Translations under genes and position numbers: made by a program
The notes under the pieces: model-generated
What the model was told of the DNA's origin: nothing
Seen by the model: the letters and a program-made list of their open reading frames with translations, nothing else
Databases searched by the model: none
NCBI GenBank assembly: GCA_963924565.1
Contig: OZ004609.1
Span: 5,828,001 to 5,892,000, forward strand
Length of the DNA stretch: 64,000 bases
Direction: 5' to 3'
Source: Ascidiella aspersa
Lineage: Eukaryota
Part shown: positions 29,643 to 49,943 of the stretch, one piece after another
Position numbering within the stretch: the first letter of the stretch is position 1
Layout: the number at the start of each line of letters is the position of its first letter

Positions 29643-31120
29643 AAGTCCCGTTCGGTAACGAGCAGGCACAGTAATAACGCGACCACGTCGAGTTAACCTC
29701 GGTCGAATGGGAACAGAGGGTTGCGGTGGTATACAAGGAATATCGGGACGTTGCGGTAAACATTGGGTAAAAGTGGGGCGAGTATTTTCCATGTTTATTA
29801 AATCAGTGTAAGTCGGTTTAAGTCGGTCAATCGAGACAGTATCTACAAGGCCATTAGCATTAATTTTTAAAAATTTACTGTTCTTTCTATAACGTTAAAC
29901 GGGCCGTCGTAAGGACACTGTAAGGGCGATCTATGACAGCCACGACGCACGAAAACAAATTTACACGATTGGAGTATACGCGGTACACTACTATGCGATT
30001 GTCTGTATCGTGATGTCGCAATGGCGCGAACGTTCTCCATTGATTTCCGGAAGTTGGACAGGAATGTTGTTACCTCCGCTGGGGTTGTAGAGGTGCCGTG
30101 TGACGGTGGTGAGAAAAACTCCCCTGGTAACCGCAGTGTCGTGCCGCACACCAGCTCCGCGGCAGGACAACCAATGTCTTCCTTCGGGGCCGTGCGAATG
30201 CCGAGCATGACTGCAGGAAGTTGATCCACCCTTGTGGCAGGAACAACACTGATCGCAGCACCGAAGTCCACGAGGTACCTTTGTCCATTGGTGCGGTCAT
30301 TAACGTGGAGAAGGCGGCGAGAACAACCAGCGGCACTAGCCGCCATTAGTGGCTGGTTGAGGCGTTTTCCTTGTACTCGCAGGGAGAAACGCACTTTTGT
30401 GCTTTAGGGCCAAATCACCTGTGGTACCAGCACAGTTGTTGAGCGTCGCGCAGGTTTCTTGTTTGCGGCGTATTGCGCTTCAGAATTGCAATTTCTTTTT
30501 GCAGTTGATTGACTTGAGCCAAAATGGGTGACGTGTCTACAGGTCAATCATGTTGTCGGCTTTCAGCGCCAAAGCTGATACTTCCAGATCAAGTGTTGCC
30601 AACACCACTCGCAAATTACCTGGTAATCGTTGAAGAAAAAGTTCGCGAAGCAAATTTTTCGAATCTTCTTCGCCCATAAGATGTTGCATTTCTCGCAACA
30701 TGTCTGATGGCTTGCGATCGCCCAGGTCTTCATGTCGAAGAGGTTTCTGTAAGCGTTGATGCTTGGTCATCGAAACCCTGCTGATGAGTGCGTATTTTAA
30801 CTGCGCGTAAGGATTCGCGTCATCTGGGTTTTTTATAAAGTCCCGCAGAACGGCGGCGATTTCGGGTGACACTGCTGCTACCACATTGTGGTACTTTGTT
30901 CTCGATAGTGTCACGCCTTTCACAGTGAATTGTGCTTCCACTTGTTAAAACCATAGTTCGGCGTCTTGTGGTCATAATGGCGGAATTTTAACAGCAACGG
31001 CTGCGACATTTTCTTCGTCCATCATAGAATTAGGTTTGAAGTGCGTTGAACATAAGCTAGCCTACAGCCTAGCAATGTGTTTTTAACCTTGCACTTACTT
31101 TGCTTGCCGGGTTCATCATT

Positions 31121-35802: not shown

Positions 35803-36825
35803 ATGCGGGACAAACTAAAGACATATATCGAAATCAGAAACACAAGGGTCTTTTGTTCAATGTTATTTACGTTATTCCCTCTATTTTTGGGTGTCGTTGC
35901 AATCAATTGTGAGCTCACCGTTATAAATATTTCCAACACATGACTTTAATTGGACTTAAGTCTTTGAGGCAATCCACTTGACTTAGACTTTTATGTTTTT
36001 AAATAATCTTTGGTTAAATTTGGTTGGTGTTTTTCCCAATATCTGCTTGTCAAACACTTTGCTCGATTAATATATCGTTTTTAGGATTTTCTAACTTGAC
36101 TTTCGTGAAAATATAATGATTCATACTGGAACGTGACTTGAAGTATGCAATTTCAGACTGGAAACGTGACAAAGAAGTAAAATAGTTTCGGACTGGAACG
36201 TGACAAGAAGTAATCAATTTATTAAAGAAAATAATTTAATTAAAAATAAAACGGCTTTGCACTGAACGTTTTTTGACTCCATTTCACTTTCACATTTTTA
36301 GACCAAAATCAGCAAATTTATAAAGTCTATTTTTACTGTGACGTCAATTTATGACGTCATTTTTGATTTTTTGCCTACACTGATTTTCGCGAGGTAAAAT
36401 AAAGTTTTAGGAGTCCGCCGTAAAAAAGGTTTAAGTCCCCCTGATCTATTTTGTTAAAAGCAGGACAAATAAGTACACGTAGTTGTTGGGCGCGTTGTAC
36501 GTGTTAAAAAGACCGATAGGGAGGTTCAAATGTACTTCCTAAGCCTAAATGATAATTTTTACCTAATCGCCCCTATCGTTGAACATTTTGTTTCTTTGAG
36601 CATTTTGTTTGAGGCCTTTGTTGTGAAGGGTAGCTTTTTCTATAAAACAAACAACCCTTTATATCGGGTTGTTGCACTGGACTGAACGTTTTCTTATAAG
36701 GAGCATATTCGAAAGAAGAATACAAATGCGAGGTCACACCATGCCCTACAGAACAAGCTCGCTAACCGAAATAGGGTGATAATGCAGAATAACTGCTTTA
36801 GCACTGTGCTACTCAACAAAATCTC

Positions 36826-37680
36826 AGGCTTGGTGCTACTTGCAACTGGGCAAGTTTAAAGCGGCGGTGCAAGTTCTGGACAGCATTTGGTGCAAGTGGA
36901 AAAGCAACCAGCCCTTCATCTACTTTTGCCTGGACGCCTCGGAAACCTGTTACTTCGAGATGCAGCATTACGACGTCGCCCTCAAGCGGAAAGAAAAGTG
37001 CCTTGGCTTCTGCCGCAAGATGGCGGACAACGAAATGCGCGACGCCAACGTTGCCTCGCAGAGCTTGGATTTAGGAAAATATTACTTGAAGCTTGGAGAC
37101 TAAGAAAAGGCCGAACATTATTTCGCTGCCGCTCTTTCAATACTCAACAAGACAACGGAAATTAACAGCATCGAAACGGCCGAGTGCTTCGCTTGTTAGC
37201 AGGTGGAAGTCGCGAAGAAAAACGTCCACGAATCAAGCACGGTTGAAATGACTTTGTCAGAGGAGGACTTTATCTACATCAGGGAGCGCCACCACAAATC
37301 GCGATCAGTCCCACGTCGCTTGCTGCCGAGACTGCCGCCAAATGTTACGATATAAAGGTGCTCTTCCTCAAAGAGATGGGTACGTTTACCGAGGCTGCAG
37401 GGTTGTTCGAATCAGAGCTTCAGGCTTACCAGGTGCTGGTTGGGAAGCCGAGCAGCCAAGTTGAGCAGAAAATCATGGAATACATGGCGGACCTGTCGCT
37501 GTGCTACGATAAATCCGGACAGCACGAGGATTGCATGCGAGTCTCGCACAAGGCCGAGGAATATTACAGTAATCGCGGCATCCCGGATTCCGGCTACCGC
37601 CAAATGGTATGCATCTCGCTGATGCGGTTAAAAAGATACAAAGAGGCACTGCGTTATTGCCAAGAAGATTTGGAAGCTCG
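36826..37680 (+). pseudogene. 5'-truncated pseudocopy of the NTase-TPR gene, part 1 (TPR region)
   Basis: Aligns to about 47510-48428 of the intact gene. In-frame TAA at 37101, internal deletion and frameshift. Confidence 0.9.
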
Positions 37681-40600: not shown

Positions 40601-42520
40601 ACCGGCAACAATATACAAAAGTGGGTTCTCACATTTCACCTTGTTTAACGCCTGTATGCGGTGTCCCGCAGGGATGTATCTTGGCCCCCCTTCTTTTTCA
40701 AACATATATTAATGATTTGCCGGCAAACACTAAGATTAACTGCAGCCTATACGCCGATGATATTGTGTGTTGTACGTCTCTCATTCCAATCTGAAAAGCC
40801 TAGAAAATATAATGCAAAATGAAATACAGAAAATTGATGATTGGTTTTGCTGCAACAAATTATCTATAAATTATTCTAAAATTCATTGTGACAGATTTAA
40901 AACATAAAAATTGCAATAATCTGTGTAACATAAAAAATAGGGGAAAAACATTTGATCAAGTATCTTCTGCAAAATGTTTAGGCCTTACTATGGACAACTA
41001 ACTAACTTGGTTACCGCATATTTAACAAGTAGAACGAAAAGTCTCCAAAGCAGTTGGTCTTCTAGCTAAAATGAAATTGTACCTAAATGTAAATTCCTTC
41101 CACCTTGTTTGTTACAGTTTAGTGAATACACACCTACAGTATTGCGTTCTAAGTTGGGGTAGAGCTTGCTTTTCAAACTTAAAACACATCACAGTCCTAC
41201 AAAACAAAGCTATCCAAATTTTAAGCAGTAGCCCTCCCAGAACAAGATTATTGCCGTTATACCAAGAGCACGCCATTCTAAAATTAAATGACATATTTAA
41301 ACTTGAAATCCTCAAACCAGTACACAAATTTCAAACTAAAAATTTACCGGATGCGATTTCCAGTTTGCTTGTACCCTTAACCACTATACACTCTTATAAT
41401 ACACGTCTACAGGATCAGCAAAACTATTCCGACCTAAAGTGAAAACAGAATCTGGAAAAAAGATCTTGGCATATTTAGGCACAAAACATTGGGAATCTAG
41501 TCCTTCTAACCTTAAATCACTTCCCTACAAATCATTTGTACGTTCACTAAAACAAGCTTACTTTAAATCATACCACGTGTGATCAAAACAAACCAAAACT
41601 TCAAACCGACGTGCCTGAAAAAAAAAATGGTAAACGCAGCCTAGCAACCGTCACGCTTGAACAACCTCCAGGCACTAAAGAGCCTCTTAATTCGTCTGTC
41701 GTTCCTGTATTATTGGTTTATTTTTTTGGCTGTTGTTACGTTTCCGCTCTGTTCTGTCCCGTTGTTGTACTTTTTGTTTATGGTTGTCGTACCCGTTCCT
41801 GTATAATTGGTTTATTTTTTTGGCTGTTGTTACGTTCCCGCTCTGTTCTGTCCCGTTGTTGTACTTTTTGTTTATGGTTGTCGTACCCGTTCCTGTATTA
41901 TTGGTTTATTTTTTTTGGCTGTTGTTACGTTCCCGCTCTGTTCTGTCCCGTTGTTGTACTTTTTGTTTATGGTTGTCGTACCCGTTCCTGTATAATTGGT
42001 TTATTTTTTTGGCTGTTGTTACGTTTCCGCTCTGTTCTGTCCCGTTGTTGTACTTTTTGTTTATGGTTGTCGTACCCGTTCCTGTATAATTGGTTTATTT
42101 TTTTGGCTGTTGTTACGTTCCCGCTCTGTTCTGTCCCGTTGTTGTACTTTTTGTTTATGGTTGTCGTACTTCTACTTGCCTTTTTTTTATTCTATGACAA
42201 TTGTGTCGTTCGCAAACTGTCCCCCTTCTGTCTTCTCTGTTGCACTGCTGCCCTTTGTTAGTTCTAAATTTGTTTGTCTGTACCTGTTTTGTATATACAA
42301 GCGCTGTTCACTGATGTAGTGGCCTCCATTGCGGCCGAAATTGTGTTGTTTTATTGTCTTTATATTGGTTACCTAATCAATTATTTCTTCTCTTAAACGT
42401 AGCCTATACCTACAGATCTATTCCGATTATATTGCGATCAGAGAGCGGCTGACTTTGATGACCTAACGGTGTTTCGCTGCTCCCTGGGAACCTTCTTTCC
42501 AAATAATAAACTATCTATCT
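37681..42520 (+). mobile_element. Degenerate near full-length CR1-group (CR1/L2/Crack-like) LINE
   Basis: ORF1 has a coiled coil plus an RRM-type segment (QYGPREN*..YGVPE..R.IGK..RPIIARF) from 37767. ORF2 has an APE endonuclease (GGVAAYI, VYRHP, GDFNINL, SLLDHF, SDHLPI) and RT ([40 protein letters not shown]), with many stops and frameshifts. The 3' end has a stem-loop, AATAAA and a CTATCTATCT tail. Confidence 0.92.
41701..42169 (+). repeat. Minisatellite: 5 near-identical copies of a 94-bp unit within the LINE 3'UTR
   Basis: Units start at 41701, 41795, 41889, 41984 and 42078, with no spacers. Confidence 0.95.
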
Positions 42521-42522
42521 GT

Positions 42523-43070
42523 GAAAAAAGTCGTTTGGGACGGATTTCAGCGATAACACAAACCTGGCATCGTTCGCCAAATCCTACTTCAACCTTGGCC
42601 TGGCTTATCAAGCTAACGAGATGAACGCACAAGCTTCATTGCATTACTGGTTTTGTCTTGACGTTTGTCTCATAGCGGGCGACCCATCGTTAAAAGGTTT
42701 GAGCGACTTACGAAGCCCACATGAGCCGATTAAGATGGGTCGTGGCTGAGGTTTTTTGCGGACTTATATAGCGAGCTCCTTTGTAGGAATAGGCACTGTA
42801 ATGAAAAATTTCAATATGTGAGTTTTTACCAGCTGTCTTGCGTATGACTTCTTTAATGCTGTTCTATAAATTTGACTCTTGTTAATTTATCAAATAGAAA
42901 TCCTTAAGTCGCCACTCTAAATCTTTAGCTTTTGGTTTTATTTTACTTTTGTTTTTCCTAATTTGCCGCTTTTGTTTGATTCTACTGACGCTTATAGTAT
43001 CAAAAAACAATTTATTCATATTTAAGAAAATACATGATTTCTTGTTTAGTGCAATAACAATTACCGGTTA
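42523..43070 (+). pseudogene. NTase-TPR pseudocopy, part 2 (C-terminus and 3'UTR)
   Basis: Homology resumes where part 1 stops (AAAAAAG..GGATTT..ACAAACCTGGCATCGTTCGCCAAATC, matching about 48430 onward) and continues through the stop codon and about 250 bp of 3'UTR. Confidence 0.9.
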
Positions 43071-44039: not shown

Positions 44040-45160
44040 GTGGCTATTTTCAAGATGGCCGCCAAACCTTAAAATGACAGAAAATTGGTCATAACTCAGT
44101 CATCTTATGACCAAAACATGTAGTTTTGTAGTCTTTATGTAGGTTTTTATACCTCTTGAAGTCGATGAAACTATTCTCAGACTTATTGAATTATCTGATA
44201 GCTTATAAATATAACATGGCAATCCAAGATGGCTGCCAAAACAATTAAAAATGAACAATAATAATGTATTGGTTATTAAAAAACGGTGAATTTCTATATA
44301 TATTTGGGTAAACTTAGCAGACATAAAGAGTTCATACAATGTTGTCATGTATACTTCTGACCTAATCAGCGTAAAGAAAGCACATGGGCCATGTTTTGCT
44401 AAAGCTCGTCGCTGTCACTCTCTATGTCAGTGGTTTTCAACCTGGGGGTCGCGACCCCCGTGTGGGTCGTTTGCCTTTTCTCTGGGGGTCGCGAAGACGA
44501 CAATCAAAAATACAAACCACTATTGCTAGAATGAGAATGAATTAGCATAAAAAATAACTGTAATGATATTAGTGAATGTTTAAACAGTTGAATAAAAAGT
44601 TGAATATTCAAACACTGAACGGCCAGAAGGCAAGTTGTGAGATAGACCTTTTGTAACAGTACAAACTTTTAAAGACAGAATTCACAACTTAAACACGTGT
44701 TTACTGTACTGCAAAAAAAATTTTAACGTTGTGACGAGATTAGTTATCACAAATACTGATTATTATTACATCACAATAACGAATATTATCACGAGAAATA
44801 TTTGGTTATGTTGTCACAAATAAAACATAGTATCTTAATACTGTGTCTTTAAATAAATGTTTGTGCCATTTTTGTGCTATTGCGCATACACAAATGCATA
44901 TGCCTGAAAGGGGGTCGTTAGTTATATTGGGTTGTTAAAATGGGTCGCGTCATGTAAAAGGTTGAAAATCACTGCTCTATGTCATCGTCTGTAATGATGT
45001 AATTTCTGTATTGGTTGTCACGTAAACCAGTTTGGCATGGCACACATCCAGCATGGCATGGTAGTCCACATCTCCGGCAACTACAGTGAGGTGGACACGA
45101 TTCGCATTTGCAGTGTATTATTTTTAGTAGGTTGTCCGGGGCAGCTTTCATGTCCGTCCT
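44040..45160 (-). mobile_element. DNA-transposon remnant (Academ-like) with a C-terminal Cys-rich domain, interrupted by the hAT MITE
   Basis: AAPDNLLKIIHCKC...CSCRRCGLPCHAGCVPC at about 44990-45151; repeated CAAGATGGC(C/T)GCC motifs at about 44051 and 44225. Confidence 0.4.
44428..44974. mobile_element. hAT-type MITE (547 bp)
   Basis: TIRs CAGTGGTTTTCAACCT / AGGTTGAAAATCACTG; 8-bp TSD CTCTATGT. Confidence 0.9.
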
Positions 45161-45610
45161 TTAGGTAAAATTACTTAACATAATACTTTTTGACAAATGA
45201 CTTCACTTGGACATCATTGAGTCAATTAACTTGGATTGAAATTAAGTGATTCCAATTTTTCATTGTTATATAAAAGCGTGCAAAAACATTTGTTCGCTAT
45301 ATCTTCAGTTTTTTTATTGGTTGTTAAGTTATTGCTCAATATAGGACGAGTTCACCTATAGCTTAAGGTTTTATTCTTGTATCAATGACTTGATTTGAAG
45401 TTGACTTGCTCTAATAATGACTTGACCGGGGCTTGACTTGGGCAACTGATGACTTACAGTCAACTCTGTTGTGAAAAAGTCAGGACTTGTGCTTATATCA
45501 TTCTATAAATGACTTCACTGGTGTTGTGTCATTTCAAACTGACTACACTGGGATAATACATTGTTGTTGTTTTTGTCGAAACAGCATTTTGAGTAACATT
45601 TTTGTGCAAC

Positions 45611-48600
45611 ATGGAAGGTCTGGCAATTCCGAGCTTGGAAGAGACAAAGATCGCTCACTTGGCTGCTGAACTGAAGGACAAGTGCCACCCGAACGGAAAA
45701 GAAATTGACCCCAAAGAGACGGCAAAGGTGCTGCACAGACTGGGCAAAGCGTACAGCGAGATCGCAGAGTTGTACAGAGAAAGCGACCCGTACAAAGAGA
45801 AAATCTCGCTGATTAGGAGCGCGGTGCTGTACAACGCCGCCTTGGTCAGGAACGTTGACAGCAGGGAAGAGGTTAAAAAAGACCTTGAAGTTCTTTGCGC
45901 CCGCGTTTTGTCACAGGCCTTAGGCTCAGATGGAATAGCAGATGGGCTTAATGATTGTGTCATTAGATGCAAGCGTAAAGCGACAGCAATGCGAAATATC
46001 GTAATCGAAACCCTGAATCATATTGGCGAAGAGATGCTTTGTAACCAAAGGACGAGGGCCGTAGAGGCGCTGCAGGAAAGGGTATACATCGACTATGGGG
46101 AGATAATGAAGGACGTGATGGCGTTTTGCCTGAACGCGTTCGGCGACGCGCCCTGTCGTTTCGCCCTGGTCGGAATGGGTTCGTATGCTCGCAAGGAAAT
46201 AACTCCCTTCTCAGATTTCGAGCATATCTACGTTCTGGATGACGCCGTAAAGTCGCGCGACGATTACGTCCAAGTGCTGGAAACGTTCAGGTGGATGACC
46301 GTGCTTTTCCAGCTGGTCGTTGTCAATATGGGCGAGACCCTGGTACCGCACGCTTCCCTGCCTTTGATCAATGACCCAGCGAGTGGAAATGACTGGTTCT
46401 TTGACGCTTACACAACGCGCGGCATCTGCTTCGACGGTATGGTGCCCTTTGCGTGTAAGTTCCCGCTGGGCATGCCGCCCACAGACCACAAACCGTGGAA
46501 GGTGGAGCTCATCAAACCGGTGTCCGACATGCTGTTTTATCTATCTGAGGACCAAGACATAAGGAACGGCTATCACCTTGCCGACATGCTCACCAAGACT
46601 GCTTATGTTTGCGGCGACAGGTGTGTATTCCAACAGTTTGAGGACGGCGTCAGACAAGCTCTCCACTCAGGCTTCTCGCGCCAGCAGCTCTGCAAACAAG
46701 TGAAAGAGGACTGGCGCGACTTCAATCTGGTGGTGAAACTCTTCACGATCACGAACGTTCCCAAGGTGAACATGAAGCGCATCATCTACCGCAGCGTGAC
46801 CCTCTTCGTGGCATCGATGGCGCGCATTCACCGCCTCTTCGCTAAGTCGTCGTTCGACGTAGTACGGTCTCTTGCGGCCAAAATGGATTACGAGAACGCA
46901 GAGCGGGACGACTTGCTCTTCGCTGTGGCTGTGGCCTGCGAGGTAAGGCTGCGACTGTACAGCGAAGGCTGCGGGGAAGCTGACTGGTTGGACACGCGAA
47001 GGCACGACATTCCCTATCGCGATTTTCTGCTGCAGACTTTCGGGCTCGAGAACACGGTTCGCTTTCTGGTCGCCACTTGTAGGCTCCAGATGTCGGTCGG
47101 CCTTGACCTCTTCCCGGGCGAGGATGGACCGATTAACCCGAGCGTTCTCGAAGTAAGAATGCTCGGAGCGTTGAAAATGCACCGCAAGGCAATTGAGCTG
47201 TGCGAGAATTGGCTTCGAGAGAAATCCAAAGAGGAAAACCTGAAGGACTGGCGGCTGTTCGTTGGCTGCTTGATAAAGCAGAACTATCTGGTGGGAAATT
47301 ACACCGAGTCCATAACTGGGTCCAAGTTGTTCTTAGAGGAAAGGAACATCGACTCGGTTTATCTCAGATTAGCTAACAACACGATCGGCGACTGCCATTT
47401 TATGAGGGCGGAATACACAGAGGCGATCAAATACTACGAGCAAGCGGCGGAGATCAACCCTCCTACAGAACACAGAAGGCAAACGCTCCTGACCACCCTC
47501 AAGTGCGTAGCTTTGTGCTACTTGCGACTGGGTAAGTTTCAAGCAGCGGCGAAAGTTCTAGACAGCATTTGGTACAAGTGGAAAAGCAACCAGGCCTTCA
47601 CCTACTTTTGCCTGGACGCCTCGGCAACCTGCTACTTTGAGCTTCAGCGTTACGACGTCGCCCTCGAACGGAGAGAAAAGTGCTTGGGCGTCTGCCGCAA
47701 GATGGCGGACAACGAACAGCGCGACGCCAACGTTGCCTCGCAGAGCTTGTATTTAGGAAAATACTACGTGAATCTTGGAGACTTAGAAAAGGCCGAACAT
47801 TATTTTGCTGCCGCTCTTTCAATACTCAAAAAGACAACGGAAATTAACAATATCGAAACGGCCGAGTGCTTCGCCTGTATGGCAGAACTTAAACAAAGTC
47901 AGGAACTATATGCGGAGGCGCTTGAACTAGCAAACAACGCACTGAAGCAGGTGGAAGTCGCGAAGGAACACGTCCACGTATCAAGCATGGTTAAAATGGC
48001 TTTGTCAGAGGAGGACTTGATCTACATGAGGGAGCGGCACCTAATATTCGCCAGCAGTCCCACGCTGCTTGCTGCCGAGACTGCCGCTAAATGTCGCGAG
48101 ATAAAGGCCATCTGCTTCAAAGAGATGGGGAAGTATTCCGAGGCAGCAGAGTTGTTTGAATCAGAGCTTCAGACCTACCAATTGTTGATTGGGGAGCCGA
48201 ACAGCCAAGCTGAGCAGAAAATCATCGAATGCTGGACGAACCTGTCGCTGTGCTACGACAAATCCGGACAGCACGAGGATTGCATGCGAGTCTCGCACAA
48301 GGCCGAGGAATATTACAGTAATCGTGGCATCCCGGATTCCGGCTTTCGCCAAATGGTATGCATCTCGCTGATGCGGTTAGAAAGATACAAAGAGGCACTG
48401 CGCTGTTGCCACGAAGATTTAGACGCTCTAAAAAAAGCATGTGGGGCGGATTTCGACAGCGAGACCACAAACCTGGCATCGTTCGCCAAATCTCATTTTA
48501 ACCTTGGGCTGACTTATCAAGCTAACGAGATGAACGCACAAGCTGCATTGCATTACAAGTTTTGTCTTGACGTTTGTCACAAAGCAGGCGACCCATCGTT

Positions 48601-48757
48601 AAAAGGTTTGAGCGACTTTAGCGCTGAACAAATAGCTTCAATTAAAATCGAAGGCCACATGAGGAGATTGAGGTTGGTCGTGGCTGAGGTTTTCTGCGGA
48701 CTTATAGCGAGTTCATTTGTAGGAATAGGCACTGTAATGAAAAATTTCAATATGTAA
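45611..48757 (+). CDS. Intronless GlnD/GlnE/DUF294-type nucleotidyltransferase + TPR-repeat protein, 1048 aa
   Basis: 3147-nt ORF from ATG 45611, with an in-frame TAA at 45593. Pol-beta NTase motif FALVGMGSYARKEITPFSDFEH (core 46172-46222); distal D in GICFDG; helical substrate-binding segment (NMKRIIYR...ACEVRLRLY); TPR-like repeats (IGDCHFMRAEYTEAIKYYEQA, LGKYYVNLGDLEKAEHYFAAA, FNLGLTYQ). Confidence 0.88.
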   Translation: MEGLAIPSLEETKIAHLAAELKDKCHPNGKEIDPKETAKVLHRLGKAYSEIAELYRESDPYKEKISLIRSAVLYNAALVRNVDSREEVKKDLEVLCARVLSQALGSDGIADGLNDCVIRCKRKATAMRNIVIETLNHIGEEMLCNQRTRAVEALQERVYIDYGEIMKDVMAFCLNAFGDAPCRFALVGMGSYARKEITPFSDFEHIYVLDDAVKSRDDYVQVLETFRWMTVLFQLVVVNMGETLVPHASLPLINDPASGNDWFFDAYTTRGICFDGMVPFACKFPLGMPPTDHKPWKVELIKPVSDMLFYLSEDQDIRNGYHLADMLTKTAYVCGDRCVFQQFEDGVRQALHSGFSRQQLCKQVKEDWRDFNLVVKLFTITNVPKVNMKRIIYRSVTLFVASMARIHRLFAKSSFDVVRSLAAKMDYENAERDDLLFAVAVACEVRLRLYSEGCGEADWLDTRRHDIPYRDFLLQTFGLENTVRFLVATCRLQMSVGLDLFPGEDGPINPSVLEVRMLGALKMHRKAIELCENWLREKSKEENLKDWRLFVGCLIKQNYLVGNYTESITGSKLFLEERNIDSVYLRLANNTIGDCHFMRAEYTEAIKYYEQAAEINPPTEHRRQTLLTTLKCVALCYLRLGKFQAAAKVLDSIWYKWKSNQAFTYFCLDASATCYFELQRYDVALERREKCLGVCRKMADNEQRDANVASQSLYLGKYYVNLGDLEKAEHYFAAALSILKKTTEINNIETAECFACMAELKQSQELYAEALELANNALKQVEVAKEHVHVSSMVKMALSEEDLIYMRERHLIFASSPTLLAAETAAKCREIKAICFKEMGKYSEAAELFESELQTYQLLIGEPNSQAEQKIIECWTNLSLCYDKSGQHEDCMRVSHKAEEYYSNRGIPDSGFRQMVCISLMRLERYKEALRCCHEDLDALKKACGADFDSETTNLASFAKSHFNLGLTYQANEMNAQAALHYKFCLDVCHKAGDPSLKGLSDFSAEQIASIKIEGHMRRLRLVVAEVFCGLIASSFVGIGTVMKNFNM

Positions 48758-49943
48758 GTTTTTACCAGTTTTTTTTTACCTTGCGTGTGGCTATCTTAAT
48801 GCCGTTCTATAAACTGGCCTCTTATCAATTTATCAAATCAAATCTCCTCTCTAAGTTTACTTTATTCTACTGTTGTGTTTGTTAATTTTTCAGCTTTTCT
48901 TTGATTGTACTGACGTTGATAGGATTTCTTTTCATATCACAAAACGATTTATTTATATTTAAGGACAAGATTTTCTATTAGGGCAATACCAATTACCAGA
49001 TTATGGCGTACAACGAACAGAGCGATTCCATTGTTGCTTTGTAAATCACAGCCAATGAAAACTCGCCGCCCCTACACCCAAACATATTCACAAAACACCG
49101 ATTCTGGTTTACAATGCACGGCAATATTTTAAAGGCTTTCATGAATTGTTTTACGTTTTGGCCTAAAGTTGATTCGAAAATTCTTCTAGAATTTAGTGAC
49201 TTTGTCAGGGCGAATAACAGACTTTAATGGTGTAATCTTAAATCACATATTTTCCAAGTTATGTGCACAAATATATATGAAGCTTTGAAAAGGTTTGATG
49301 TATTCATATGAATATATAATATAAACCATAGCCAGTCCTGCTAGATTTCTTTTGATATTTACATATTTCGGCAAAATAGACCACGTTAGCTATTGTGAAA
49401 ACACGATCAAATTCAGAGCTCTATGCGACAGTTATTACGCCTCTCTGTTGTACATTTATAATATATATATTATTTTTTTAAATACAATAGTATTTATGCT
49501 CCACAACAGCAATTCTAATCCAAAATTGTCCAAATTACTAACAAGCAAATATTAATGTAGGCCTATGTCTAAATGTTTGCGGTTAATGGGCATTTGTACA
49601 CGTCAACAATAATTGTTTTGATTTTAGTGAAAGAGATGTTAAAACACCACTCTTAAGTAGTGTAGAAAAACAGTTCAAAGCCACAAAAAAGTTGAGTGGT
49701 TACAAGAAAGCCGGTGATTATACTAAAACCAAATTGGGAACACAAATGACACACTTCACACAATAGGTCTAGAAAGCAGTATTACAAGTTTGTCAACCTG
49801 AATTTGTGTTTACGTTTTTTATCAAACATCGGTATGGAATTTAAATATCGAACACCAACGTAGCCAGTGATGTGATCTTAAGCGTAAGCATGAGATTCTA
49901 TTTATTTCGAAGCAAAGTTGTCCTCTGGTATAACATAACAAAT

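What the first reader, a model, noticed from the sequence alone, without database searches (positions are those of the whole stretch)
45611..48757. Intronless animal gene fusing a bacterial GlnD/GlnE-type nucleotidyltransferase to a TPR array: candidate sensor-coupled nucleotidylation system
Seen: a 1048-aa single-exon ORF, whereas the neighbouring transporter and lectin genes have 3-13 exons. It has GMGSYARKEITPFSDFE (46172-46222), a candidate third acidic ligand (GICFDG, 46433), a helical domain ending ACEVRLRLY, and then many TPR-like repeats. Established: hGSxxRxEhxxxSDhD/E is the pol-beta NTase signature of GlnD (PII uridylyltransferase), GlnE (glutamine synthetase adenylyltransferase) and DUF294. 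GlnD and GlnE transfer NMP to proteins, and animals lack that nitrogen-control pathway. Characterised animal signalling NTases (cGAS, OAS) belong to other subfamilies. Inference: TPR ligand binding may switch on protein AMPylation/UMPylation or second-messenger synthesis, in the manner of an innate-immune receptor-enzyme. The local pseudocopy fits birth-and-death evolution. I recall similar architectures in amphioxus and endosymbiotic bacteria, but this must be verified.
Basis: partly seen in the sequence, partly recalled or inferred. Interest (0 to 1): 0.85.

Follow-up and report, generated by a model that had tools for sequence, protein, structure and literature searches.

The report
Sea-squirt AMPylase-like enzyme with TPR array
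This intact, intronless animal gene joins a bacterial-style protein-AMPylating enzyme domain (the kind Legionella injects as DrrA) to a TPR repeat array and a probable membrane anchor. It is one divergent copy of an unstudied family of about 80 genes in this genome, so animals may have a third class of AMPylase, but no activity has been tested.

Summary
Window 45611-48757 (+) is an uninterrupted 1048-aa ORF with the pol-beta motif GMGSYARKEITPFSDFE at the stated coordinates, and a decayed partial copy lies 9 kb upstream.

- **Domain identity:** Pfam DUF294 scores above its cut-off. The AlphaFold model of residues 1-530 (pLDDT 90.6) matches the AMPylation domain of Legionella DrrA (Z 22.5) and both GlnE domains (Z 18-19). 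It does not match cGAS/OAS.
- **Rest of the protein:** residues 544-992 form about 11 TPR-like hairpins. Residues 1022-1043 form a hydrophobic tail, which only a minority of family members have.
- **Family:** this genome holds at least 80 loci, about 60 with open frames, mostly in one tandem cluster. Relatives are numerous in Ciona, Clavelina and Branchiostoma.
- **Bacterial relatives:** the nearest have the same architecture and occur in intracellular symbionts (Holosporaceae 'Namur'; the published Neochlamydia NEX2 family).
- **Selection:** this copy keeps 69 of 70 family-conserved NTase positions. In recent paralogs the TPR part evolves faster (dN/dS 0.61 against 0.33).
- **Expression:** evidence is thin, only a few RNA reads.

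The best reading is a TPR-guided, membrane-anchored protein NMP-transferase. The immune-sensor role remains inference. The scan has already reported this family on other DNA of this genome (s1-801573, s1-801596, s1-788675).

The parts
45611..48757 (+). Complete intronless ORF of 1048 aa, stop codon included
   Evidence: The start methionine aligns with the start of paralogs.
45611..46045 (+). N-terminal helical region, residues 1-145 (TPR-like hairpins), conserved in the family
   Evidence: AF2 helices 9-137. TPR-like structural matches at Z 7-8 only. Residues from 47 onward are part of the alignment to DrrA.
46046..46660 (+). Pol-beta nucleotidyltransferase core, residues about 146-350
   Evidence: Pfam DUF294 over residues 149-220. 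Beta strands 184-189, 204-209, 301-303 and 330-335. DrrA and GlnE fold matches.
46172..46222 (+). Catalytic signature G188-M-G-S191 ... S201-D202-F-E204
   Evidence: Seen directly in the sequence. Conserved in 30 paralogs. S201, D202 and F203 are invariant in 44 sequences.
46433..46435 (+). D275 (FDG), a conserved acidic residue and one of four candidates for the third metal ligand
   Evidence: Conserved in at least 90% of sequences. Its role was not established.
46670..47128 (+). Helical substrate-binding domain (KNTase_C / HEPN-like), residues 354-506, containing ACEVRLRLY
   Evidence: VIA matches of model residues 354-506 to the DrrA C-lobe, YutE and HEPN proteins at Z 8-10. Pfam DUF294_C is weak here, E 0.17.
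47240..48586 (+). TPR-like array, residues 544-992, about 22 helices or roughly 11 hairpins
   Evidence: Pfam TPR_12, TPR_1, TPR_2 and others. Consensus-TPR matches in the PDB. Full-length AF2 model.
48674..48739 (+). C-terminal hydrophobic segment L1022-M1043, flanked by RRLR and K: candidate tail anchor
   Evidence: Kyte-Doolittle 19-mer mean of 2.04. It lies within the last helix, 995-1047. Similar tails occur in 4 of 31 own-genome and 8 of 256 tunicate-type relatives.
36804..37678 (+). Pseudocopy, first part: matches residues 626-939, with in-frame stops and a frameshift at 37292/37298
42525..42818 (+). Pseudocopy, last part: matches residues 941-1048, with a stop inside the tail segment
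44297..45478 (.). High-copy repeat directly upstream of the gene
   Evidence: Contig word depth of 1,000-47,000 here against 60-160 over the gene.

Best explanation
The gene encodes a cytosol-facing enzyme that is probably held on a membrane by a C-terminal tail anchor. Its N-terminal half is a GlnE/DrrA-type nucleotidyltransferase, which most likely transfers AMP (possibly another NMP) from an NTP onto a hydroxyl side chain of a target protein. Its C-terminal TPR array selects the partner, either the substrate or a ligand that controls the enzyme. It is an old, divergent, single-copy branch of a family of about 80 intronless genes that grew by tandem duplication in this tunicate-type genome. 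The family is shared with other sea squirts and lancelets, and its closest non-animal relatives are same-architecture proteins of intracellular bacterial symbionts. Shown: the fold, the intact motif, family size and distribution, conservation of the enzyme half, and faster change in the TPR half. Inferred: the transferred nucleotide, a protein as acceptor, membrane anchoring, and any role in immunity or conflict.
For: (1) Fold. The AF2 model of residues 1-530 has pLDDT 90.6 and pTM 0.91. Foldseek gives DrrA 6yx5_B at E 2.5e-8 and GlnE 3k7d and 1v4a at E 1e-7 to 2e-6. VIA-align over 48,161 chains gives DrrA at Z 22.5 (324 of 339 residues aligned), GlnE at Z 18.9 and 18.0, and the next unrelated entry (7n6g) at Z 10.5. 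(2) Active site. The motif G-S...D-x-E is present, and it is kept in 30 paralogs. This copy keeps 69 of 70 columns that are at least 90% conserved in 43 other NTase domains, at only 34-46% overall identity. (3) The ORF is open in three independent sets of contigs, with no indel or stop. Allelic SNPs give 20 non-synonymous to 11 synonymous changes, pN/pS about 0.5. (4) Family. The genome has 85 matches, mostly uninterrupted frames of 850-1100 aa in same-strand tandem arrays. There are 1212 clusters at 50% identity with E <= 1e-3. Named relatives come from Ciona, Clavelina and Branchiostoma. (5) In 78 of 78 pairs of recent paralogs, dN/dS is higher in the TPR half (median 0.61) than in the NTase half (0.33). 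(6) Bacterial same-architecture relatives exist. Holosporaceae 'Namur' has about 10 such genes beside an IS5 transposase and a patatin-ankyrin effector-like gene. Neochlamydia NEX2 has F-box + DUF294 + TPR in 50 members (PMC4209131). (7) A few RNA-seq reads lie inside the ORF and carry the same four SNPs as the DNA-like contigs.
Against: No activity, substrate or localisation has been tested. Expression evidence is only about four or five reads from 6% of one RNA run, and most laid reads fit only in part. pN/pS of about 0.5 from 23-31 SNPs cannot be told from neutrality at this sample size. The third catalytic carboxylate is not pinned down, and its loop is poorly modelled. The fold matches the deadenylylating N-terminal domain of GlnE as well as it matches the adenylylating domain, so the direction of the reaction is open. 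No pair of paralogs has TPR dN/dS above 1, and dS is also higher in the TPR half (0.52 against 0.23). Relaxed constraint, gene conversion in the enzyme half or repeat misalignment could therefore explain the contrast. The hydrophobic tail is only moderately hydrophobic and contains E1026.
Confidence: 0.55

Rival explanations
1. The enzyme is the same but the purpose is different: a housekeeping or regulatory AMPylase or de-AMPylase, for example controlling chaperones or metabolism as FICD and SelO do, rather than an immune or conflict sensor. On this reading the expansion reflects subfunctionalisation.
For: The known animal AMPylase FICD also combines a membrane anchor, TPRs and a catalytic domain (PMC12409994). 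This copy is an old single-copy branch with a strongly conserved enzyme half. The fold matches the deadenylylating GlnE domain equally well.
Against: About 80 tandem copies with pseudogenes and fast-changing TPRs are unusual for housekeeping regulators. No 1:1 orthologue was seen: the best hit outside this genome is 41-45% identical.
Confidence: 0.2
2. The NTase acts on something other than a protein. It might make a nucleotide second messenger, or nucleotidylate RNA, tRNA or a small molecule, as CD-NTases, MenT or aminoglycoside NTases do.
For: Pol-beta NTases with KNTase_C/HEPN-like helical domains include aminoglycoside NTases, which appear as weak fold matches (ANT-4 at Z 8.0, AAD(9) at Z 7.6). 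Sequence alone cannot fix the acceptor.
Against: The three strong matches, at Z 18-22.5 and covering the whole domain, all act on proteins: two add AMP and one removes it. No cGAS, OAS or CD-NTase entry appears in the Foldseek or VIA lists. PADLOC gave only a marginal motif-level hit, E 5e-4.
Confidence: 0.12
3. This copy is a silent or decaying relic whose open frame persists by chance or recent origin.
For: RNA coverage is very low. pN/pS is about 0.5. A dead partial duplicate lies next door, and a high-copy repeat abuts the 5' end.
Against: A 3.1-kb frame is open on a long branch (0.77 substitutions per site). 69 of 70 conserved NTase positions are kept. There are no stops or indels in three samples. 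By contrast, the neighbouring pseudocopy has acquired stops and a frameshift at only 10-19% nucleotide divergence.
Confidence: 0.1
4. The gene is bacterial contamination or a misassembly rather than a true animal gene.
For: The domain type is otherwise bacterial, the gene has no introns, and its GC (0.51) differs from that of the flanks (0.37).
Against: It lies 5.87 Mb into a 39-Mb contig. About 80 paralogs lie on at least six large contigs. The flanks are AT-rich, ORF-poor and rich in repeats and transposons. Contigs from three samples run from the ORF into the 3' flank and show allelic SNPs. The bacterial relatives have GC 0.30 and only 26% identity. The query nests inside a clade of own-genome copies.
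Confidence: 0.01

Closest known systems
DrrA/SidM AMPylation domain of Legionella pneumophila (PDB 6yx5, 3nku)
   Same: Best structural match: Z 22.5, with 324 of 339 residues aligned and covering both the NTase core and the helical lobe. It has the same G-S...D-x-[DE] motif region. Some lancelet relatives touch Pfam SidM_N just under its cut-off.
   Different: Sequence identity is only about 14%. DrrA carries a GEF domain and a PI4P-binding domain, not TPRs. It is a secreted bacterial effector, whereas this is a host-genome gene with a TPR array and a hydrophobic tail.
GlnE (glutamine synthetase adenylyltransferase) and GlnD (PII uridylyltransferase)
   Same: Same NTase plus helical-domain fold (GlnE Z 18-19). 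Same signature motif, with weak motif-level NCBIfam hits to GlnD.
   Different: There is one NTase domain rather than GlnE's two. There are no HD or ACT domains as in GlnD. Scores fall far below the equivalog cut-offs (12 bits against more than 600). There is no nitrogen-control context.
Neochlamydia NEX2 family (Domman et al. 2014, PMC4209131) and the Holosporaceae 'Namur' NTase-TPR proteins
   Same: Same order of DUF294-type NTase followed by a long TPR array. They are also expanded into multigene families: 50 in Neochlamydia, and about 10 genes from 18 matches in the Holosporaceae genome. The Holosporaceae protein aligns over residues 61-460 at 26% identity, with a profile E of 1.8e-68.
   Different: These are bacterial, presumed effectors. 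NEX2 usually has an N-terminal F-box, sometimes OTU, which is absent here. None has a hydrophobic C-terminal tail. I could not fetch the NEX2 sequences to align them.
FICD/HYPE, the metazoan Fic-domain AMPylase
   Same: An analogous design: membrane anchor + TPR + AMPylating domain in an animal protein (PMC12409994).
   Different: The catalytic fold is unrelated (Fic rather than pol-beta NTase). The anchor is N-terminal and there are two TPRs. It is single-copy in animals, against about 80 copies here.
Uncharacterised chordate proteins auto-named 'Protein-PII uridylyltransferase N-terminal domain-containing protein' (Branchiostoma, Clavelina, Ciona)
   Same: True family members: same NTase and TPR architecture, with E values of 1e-95 to 1e-118 and 36-45% identity for the tunicate-type members.
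   Different: None is close to this copy, and there is no 1:1 orthologue. Lancelet members are longer, sometimes carry several NTase stretches or the NTase at the C-terminal end, and never have the hydrophobic tail.

Membership tests
Pol-beta nucleotidyltransferase superfamily, GlnE/DrrA/DUF294 branch | Signature hG[GS]x9-13Dh[DE]h on strand-helix-strand | tested here: met
   G188-M-G-S191 ... D202-F-E204, flanked by strands 184-189 and 204-209.
Pol-beta nucleotidyltransferase superfamily, GlnE/DrrA/DUF294 branch | Third catalytic carboxylate on a neighbouring strand | tested here: inconclusive
   Four conserved acidic candidates: E242, D265, D275 and E299. No model coordinates were available, and the 272-287 loop has pLDDT below 50 in the full-length model.
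Pol-beta nucleotidyltransferase superfamily, GlnE/DrrA/DUF294 branch | Pfam DUF294 (PF03445) above the gathering score | tested here: met
   26.9-28.1 bits against a cut-off of 21.
Pol-beta nucleotidyltransferase superfamily, GlnE/DrrA/DUF294 branch | C-terminal helical substrate-binding domain (KNTase_C clan; DUF294_C) | tested here: met
   Met by fold: model residues 354-506 match the DrrA C-lobe and HEPN/YutE-type proteins at Z 8-10, and the whole-domain matches to DrrA and GlnE include it. Not met by sequence for this copy: DUF294_C scores 12.2 bits against 22.5. A lancelet relative reaches 33 bits.
Pol-beta nucleotidyltransferase superfamily, GlnE/DrrA/DUF294 branch | NMP transfer to a protein hydroxyl | not testable with these tools
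   Needs a biochemical assay.
GlnD (PII uridylyltransferase) orthologue | NTase + HD + ACT architecture, reaching the NCBIfam equivalog score | tested here: not met
   Best GlnD equivalogs score 11.6-12.6 bits against cut-offs of 631-1299, over the motif region only. No HD or ACT hits.
GlnE orthologue | Two tandem NTase domains (deadenylylating and adenylylating) joined by a linker | tested here: not met
   There is one NTase domain followed by TPRs. No Pfam GlnE hit.
cGAS/OAS/CD-NTase (Mab21-type) signalling NTases | Mab21/CD-NTase fold | tested here: not met
   No such entry appears in the Foldseek or VIA-align lists, and no Pfam Mab-21 or OAS hit was found.
Neochlamydia NEX2-type proteins | N-terminal F-box, then DUF294, then C-terminal TPRs | tested here: not met
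   The order DUF294 then TPR is present, but no F-box or OTU hit was found. The family definition comes from PMC4209131.
Chordate NTase-TPR family (unnamed) | Full-length similarity of the roughly 500-aa NTase module plus a C-terminal TPR array, and placement inside the clade | tested here: met
   E values down to 1e-118. The query sits inside a clade of 23 rows (SH-aLRT 96) in which every other row is an own-genome copy, within a tunicate-type clade of 59 rows (SH-aLRT 100).
Tail-anchored membrane proteins | A single hydrophobic segment within about 30 residues of the C-terminus and no signal peptide | tested here: inconclusive
   L1022-M1043 lies 5 residues from the end and is flanked by basic residues, with a 19-mer hydropathy of 2.04 and one Glu inside. 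No dedicated predictor or experiment was available.

The most novel reading that the evidence does not exclude
Sea squirts and lancelets use a large, diversifying family of GlnE/DrrA-type AMPylases as receptor-enzymes. The TPR array recognises a microbial or danger-associated protein and thereby releases or directs AMPylation of a host or pathogen target. A tail-anchored subset, including this gene, would signal from an organelle surface. That would be a third, bacterial-derived class of animal AMPylase and a new logic for innate immunity.
Probability: 0.2. Interest if true: 0.85.

Novelty: new variant of a known kind. Interest (0 to 1): 0.6.

Why it matters
Protein AMPylation in animals is currently attributed to two enzymes, FICD and SelO (review PMC12409994). 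The GlnE/DrrA-type adenylyltransferase is treated as bacterial. Here that fold occurs with an intact active site in an animal genome, in about 80 copies. It is fused to a fast-changing binding array and, in this copy, to a probable membrane anchor. The same family is numerous in lancelets and in other sea squirts. I found no paper describing it. If the proteins are active, they open a new set of animal post-translational writers with ready-made specificity modules. Their kinship with symbiont effector-like families also bears on how effectors and host defences exchange parts. This gene is one more member of the family rather than a discovery by itself. What it adds is the tail-anchored, GC3-rich, single-copy branch with a dead duplicate beside it.

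Tried and rejected
- **Sequence search of solved structures:** searching with the protein gave only designed TPRs. Searching with the 44-sequence profile gave nothing significant, with DrrA at E 0.28 over the motif only. The link to DrrA and GlnE therefore rests on fold.
- **A rooted tree:** canonical bacterial DUF294 proteins were fetched from 11 of 81 alphaproteobacterial genomes, but only one aligned to the family profile (E 5.5e-5, about 110 residues). No outgroup could be used, and the direction of transfer between bacteria and animals stays open.
- **Contigs encoding the metagenome and Logan hits:** The origin of the short-contig relatives P0281, P0307, P0349 and P0389-P0397 is unknown. 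The JGI 'metagenome' loci look eukaryotic, with 2 ORFs over 150 aa in 21 kb.
- **Range outside chordates:** the last homologue search was swamped by Branchiostoma. The 'soft coral' range reported by an earlier scan agent was neither confirmed nor refuted.
- **PADLOC:** only a marginal motif-level hit, PDC-S09 at E 5e-4.
- **Flanking repeats or inverted repeats that would mark a mobile element around the gene:** none found. The same-strand tandem arrays argue for unequal crossing-over rather than transposition.
- **NTase remnant of the pseudocopy:** none found in the window at E 1e-3.
- **Contamination:** rejected; see the rival explanations.
- **Not checked:** I did not identify the species, and I did not check the neighbours' exon structures.
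Full report
**Observation.** Window 45611-48757 (+) is one uninterrupted ORF of 1048 aa. The coordinates given for GMGSYARKEITPFSDFE (46172-46222), for D275 in GICFDG (46433) and for the ACEVRLRLY helix are correct. The gene is GC-richer (0.51; GC3 0.64) than its flanks (0.37). Pfam reports DUF294 above its gathering score over residues 149-220, a weak DUF294_C, and many TPR families over residues about 560-900. NCBIfam shows only motif-level, far sub-threshold hits to GlnD.

**Structure.** I modelled residues 1-530 with a 44-sequence alignment of paralogs and homologues (A1). The model has pLDDT 90.6 and pTM 0.91.
- Foldseek against the PDB puts the DrrA AMPylation domain first (6yx5_B, E 2.5e-8), followed by the two domains of E. 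coli GlnE (3k7d, 1v4a). Everything else is at E of 0.04 or worse.
- An independent all-against-all structural search gives DrrA at Z 22.5 (324 of 339 residues, rmsd 4.2) and GlnE at Z 18.9 and 18.0. DrrA fragments follow, then a large drop to generic helical matches at Z 10.5 or lower. Residues 354-506 also match HEPN/KNTase_C-type helical domains.
- No cGAS, OAS or CD-NTase appears in either list.
- Profile-to-sequence search of the PDB finds nothing significant, with DrrA at E 0.28 over the motif only. The relationship is therefore visible at fold level, not at sequence level.
- The full-length model (pLDDT 82.9, pTM 0.72) shows helical hairpins from 544 to 992, about 11 TPR-like repeats, and a final long helix 995-1047.

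**Tail.** The last helix contains L1022-M1043, a moderately hydrophobic stretch flanked by RRLR and K and ending 5 residues before the stop. There is no N-terminal signal-like segment. Such tails are a minority trait. They occur in 4 of 31 sampled copies in this genome and 8 of 256 tunicate-type relatives, but in 0 of 117 lancelet proteins and 0 of 5 bacterial ones. A tail-anchored, cytosol-facing topology is my inference.

**Family in this genome.** A six-frame search of the 308-Mb assembly gives 85 matches, a lower bound that corresponds to about 80 loci.
- About 60 loci have full-length NTase matches without stops in open frames of 850-1100 aa.
- About 8 have one in-frame stop, and the rest are truncated.
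- Most lie on one strand in a tandem cluster at 0.7-2.7 Mb of contig C6.
- The window's gene is a lone copy on C3 and is only 46-49% identical to its nearest paralogs.
- The catalytic motif and the FDG element are kept in nearly all 30 paralogs I extracted. One clearly degenerate copy is L016.

**Family elsewhere.** An exhaustive HMMER search finds 1212 clusters at 50% identity with E <= 1e-3, of which 358 are at E <= 1e-30.
- Named relatives are 'uncharacterized' proteins of Clavelina, Ciona and, in very large numbers, Branchiostoma. Several are auto-named 'Protein-PII uridylyltransferase N-terminal domain-containing protein'.
- The many JGI 'metagenome' loci come from a few related samples and look like host DNA, with 2 ORFs over 150 aa in 21 kb.
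- In one representative genome per bacterial or archaeal species, the family's motif patterns recover a single confirmed relative, Holosporaceae bacterium 'Namur'.
- That 1.9-Mb genome has 18 matches in roughly ten genes of 1200-2270 aa with the same NTase-then-TPR order. They sit on GC-0.30 contigs, beside an IS5 transposase, a patatin-ankyrin effector-like gene and a pentapeptide-repeat giant.
- Only 2 of 301 sampled genomes of its class match the family profile.
- The best non-self hits of the Holosporaceae protein are lancelet proteins (E 1e-140), ahead of its own paralog.
- The literature describes a matching bacterial family, Neochlamydia NEX2: 50 proteins with F-box, DUF294 and C-terminal TPRs (PMC4209131). 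The ESM Atlas also lists a Chlamydiota TPR+DUF294 cluster.
- I found no paper on the animal family.

**Phylogeny.** I built a 90-row maximum-likelihood tree of the NTase module.
- It contains a tunicate-type clade of 59 rows (SH-aLRT 100, stem length 1.13) holding all copies from this genome, Ciona, Clavelina, the unnamed ENA proteins and the JGI contigs.
- The lancelet copies lie outside that clade. 23 of the 24 form one strongly supported group (SH-aLRT 98), and the other, P0342, branches alone beside them.
- The Holosporaceae and unnamed short-contig sequences fall outside both.
- The query sits inside a clade of 23 rows (SH-aLRT 96) in which all the other rows are own-genome copies, on a long branch of 0.77.
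- Canonical bacterial DUF294 proteins are too distant to serve as an outgroup. Whether animals received the gene from bacteria or the reverse is therefore not resolved. The lack of introns and the bacterial range of the wider fold favour bacteria-to-animal transfer, but that is inference.

**Selection.**
- This copy keeps 69 of the 70 alignment columns that are at least 90% conserved among the 43 other NTase domains. The one exception is L192Y. This argues for long-term constraint on the enzyme.
- Among 13 recent C6 paralogs (78 pairs), median dN/dS is 0.33 in the NTase half and 0.61 in the TPR half. It is higher in the TPR half in every pair and never above 1.
- dS is also higher in the TPR half, so gene conversion or repeat misalignment may contribute to the contrast.
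- SNPs between the assembly and contigs of three other samples give 20 non-synonymous and 11 synonymous changes in the ORF. The ratio is 15:8 if a stretch that may be contaminated by the pseudocopy is excluded.
- That corresponds to pN/pS of about 0.5. There are no stops, no indels and no change at catalytic residues. The numbers are too small to exclude neutrality.

**Pseudocopy.**
- Pieces at 36804-37292, 37298-37678 and 42525-42818 match residues 626-1048.
- Nucleotide identity is 88-90% in the first two pieces and 81.5% in the last.
- The copy has two in-frame stops, an internal deletion, a frameshift and a stop within the tail.
- A 4.8-kb interruption separates the pieces and includes a 94-nt x5 tandem repeat.
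- No NTase remnant is present in the window.
- This fits birth-and-death turnover.

**Expression and assembly.**
- One RNA-seq run of the same species label was read to about 6%. A handful of reads fall inside the ORF (bins 46267-46463, 46661-46857, 48237-48433).
- Their first mate lies on the minus strand, which fits a plus-strand RNA if the library is of the usual stranded type.
- Two of them carry the same four SNPs as the DNA-like contigs, so they come from this locus. This is weak evidence of low expression.
- Contigs from three samples cover the ORF and run into the 3' flank. The 5' side abuts a very high-copy repeat (44297-45478).
- One contig in one sample joins 45426 to 49461, skipping the gene. 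Only 20 letters lie on one side of the joint, so I treat it as a hint, not a finding.
- Contamination is excluded by chromosomal context, copy number, composition and phylogeny.

**Mechanism.** The shown parts are the fold, the motif, the architecture, the expansion and the asymmetric evolutionary rates. From the three closest structures, two of which transfer AMP to a protein tyrosine and one of which removes it (DrrA on Rab1, GlnE on glutamine synthetase; established knowledge and PMC12409994), I infer protein NMPylation. The TPR array would act as the specificity or control module, and the tail would hold this copy on a membrane. The immune-receptor reading is plausible but untested. A regulatory AMPylase or de-AMPylase, or a non-protein acceptor, are the live rivals.

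**Relation to earlier scan reports.** Three follow-up reports on other DNA of this genome reached the same family-level reading (s1-801573, s1-801596, s1-788675). My family count, fold assignment and TPR/NTase rate contrast were obtained independently and agree with them. Their statement that soft corals also carry the family was not tested here.

**Limits.** No model coordinates were available to check active-site geometry. Only one read-laying run was allowed.

Noticed in passing
window 48752-48759: The stop codon TAA (48755-48757) lies inside a perfect splice-donor-like GTAAGT (48754-48759). If that donor were used, the frame would continue into a downstream exon instead of ending after the hydrophobic tail. 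The pseudocopy ends in the same way (NFNM*).
   Followed up: no
window 45505-45583: TATAAA at 45505-45510 lies about 100 nt upstream of the ATG. A pyrimidine tract ending in AG at about 45568-45583 could be an intron or spliced-leader acceptor just before the start codon.
   Followed up: no
window 49003-49037: A 35-nt stretch 250 nt downstream of the stop is 83% identical to an internal part of the ORF (47702-47736, encoding MADNEQRDANVA). It may be a small leftover of a duplication.
   Followed up: no
window 45426 / 49461: One contig of sample X3 (depth 95) joins 45426 to 49461, which would remove the whole gene. Only 20 letters lie on the shorter side and both ends are near repeats. It is either a presence/absence allele or an assembly artefact.
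   Followed up: partly
window 45611-48754 against loci L002-L032: This copy has GC3 of 0.64, while 30 paralogs have a median of 0.355 (range 0.28-0.60). Dispersed single copies tend to be GC3-richer than copies in the C6 cluster. The cause is unknown; biased gene conversion, expression level or local recombination are possibilities.
   Followed up: partly
window 30540-30941 (-) and 26-32 kb: An ORF with Pfam DUF7041 (E 2.5e-16) lies in a GC-richer block (0.40-0.44). I take it for a transposon remnant.
   Followed up: no
window 41700-42169: A tandem repeat of a 94-nt unit, 5 copies, 97% matches, lies inside the 4.8-kb stretch that splits the pseudocopy.
   Followed up: no
G001 contigs C59, C79, C7 (loci L119-L121): The Holosporaceae 'Namur' assembly carries about ten NTase-TPR genes, two or three per contig. 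Beside them lie an IS5-family transposase fragment, a patatin-ankyrin protein resembling Dot/Icm effectors, and a 1383-aa pentapeptide-repeat protein. It looks like an effector island.
   Followed up: partly
proteins P0121, P0134, P0263, P0306, P0390: Lancelet gene models hold 3-4 NTase stretches in one protein, or place the NTase at the C-terminal end. Some combine it with PGRP-amidase, Sushi, CUB/LDLa or M28 peptidase domains. I could not tell whether these are true fusions or merged tandem genes.
   Followed up: no
loci L004-L012, L027-L031 (C6 cluster): Synonymous divergence is about twice as high in the TPR half (0.52) as in the NTase half (0.23) of the same gene pairs. This suggests gene conversion that homogenises the enzyme half, or repeat shuffling in the TPR half.
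   Followed up: no
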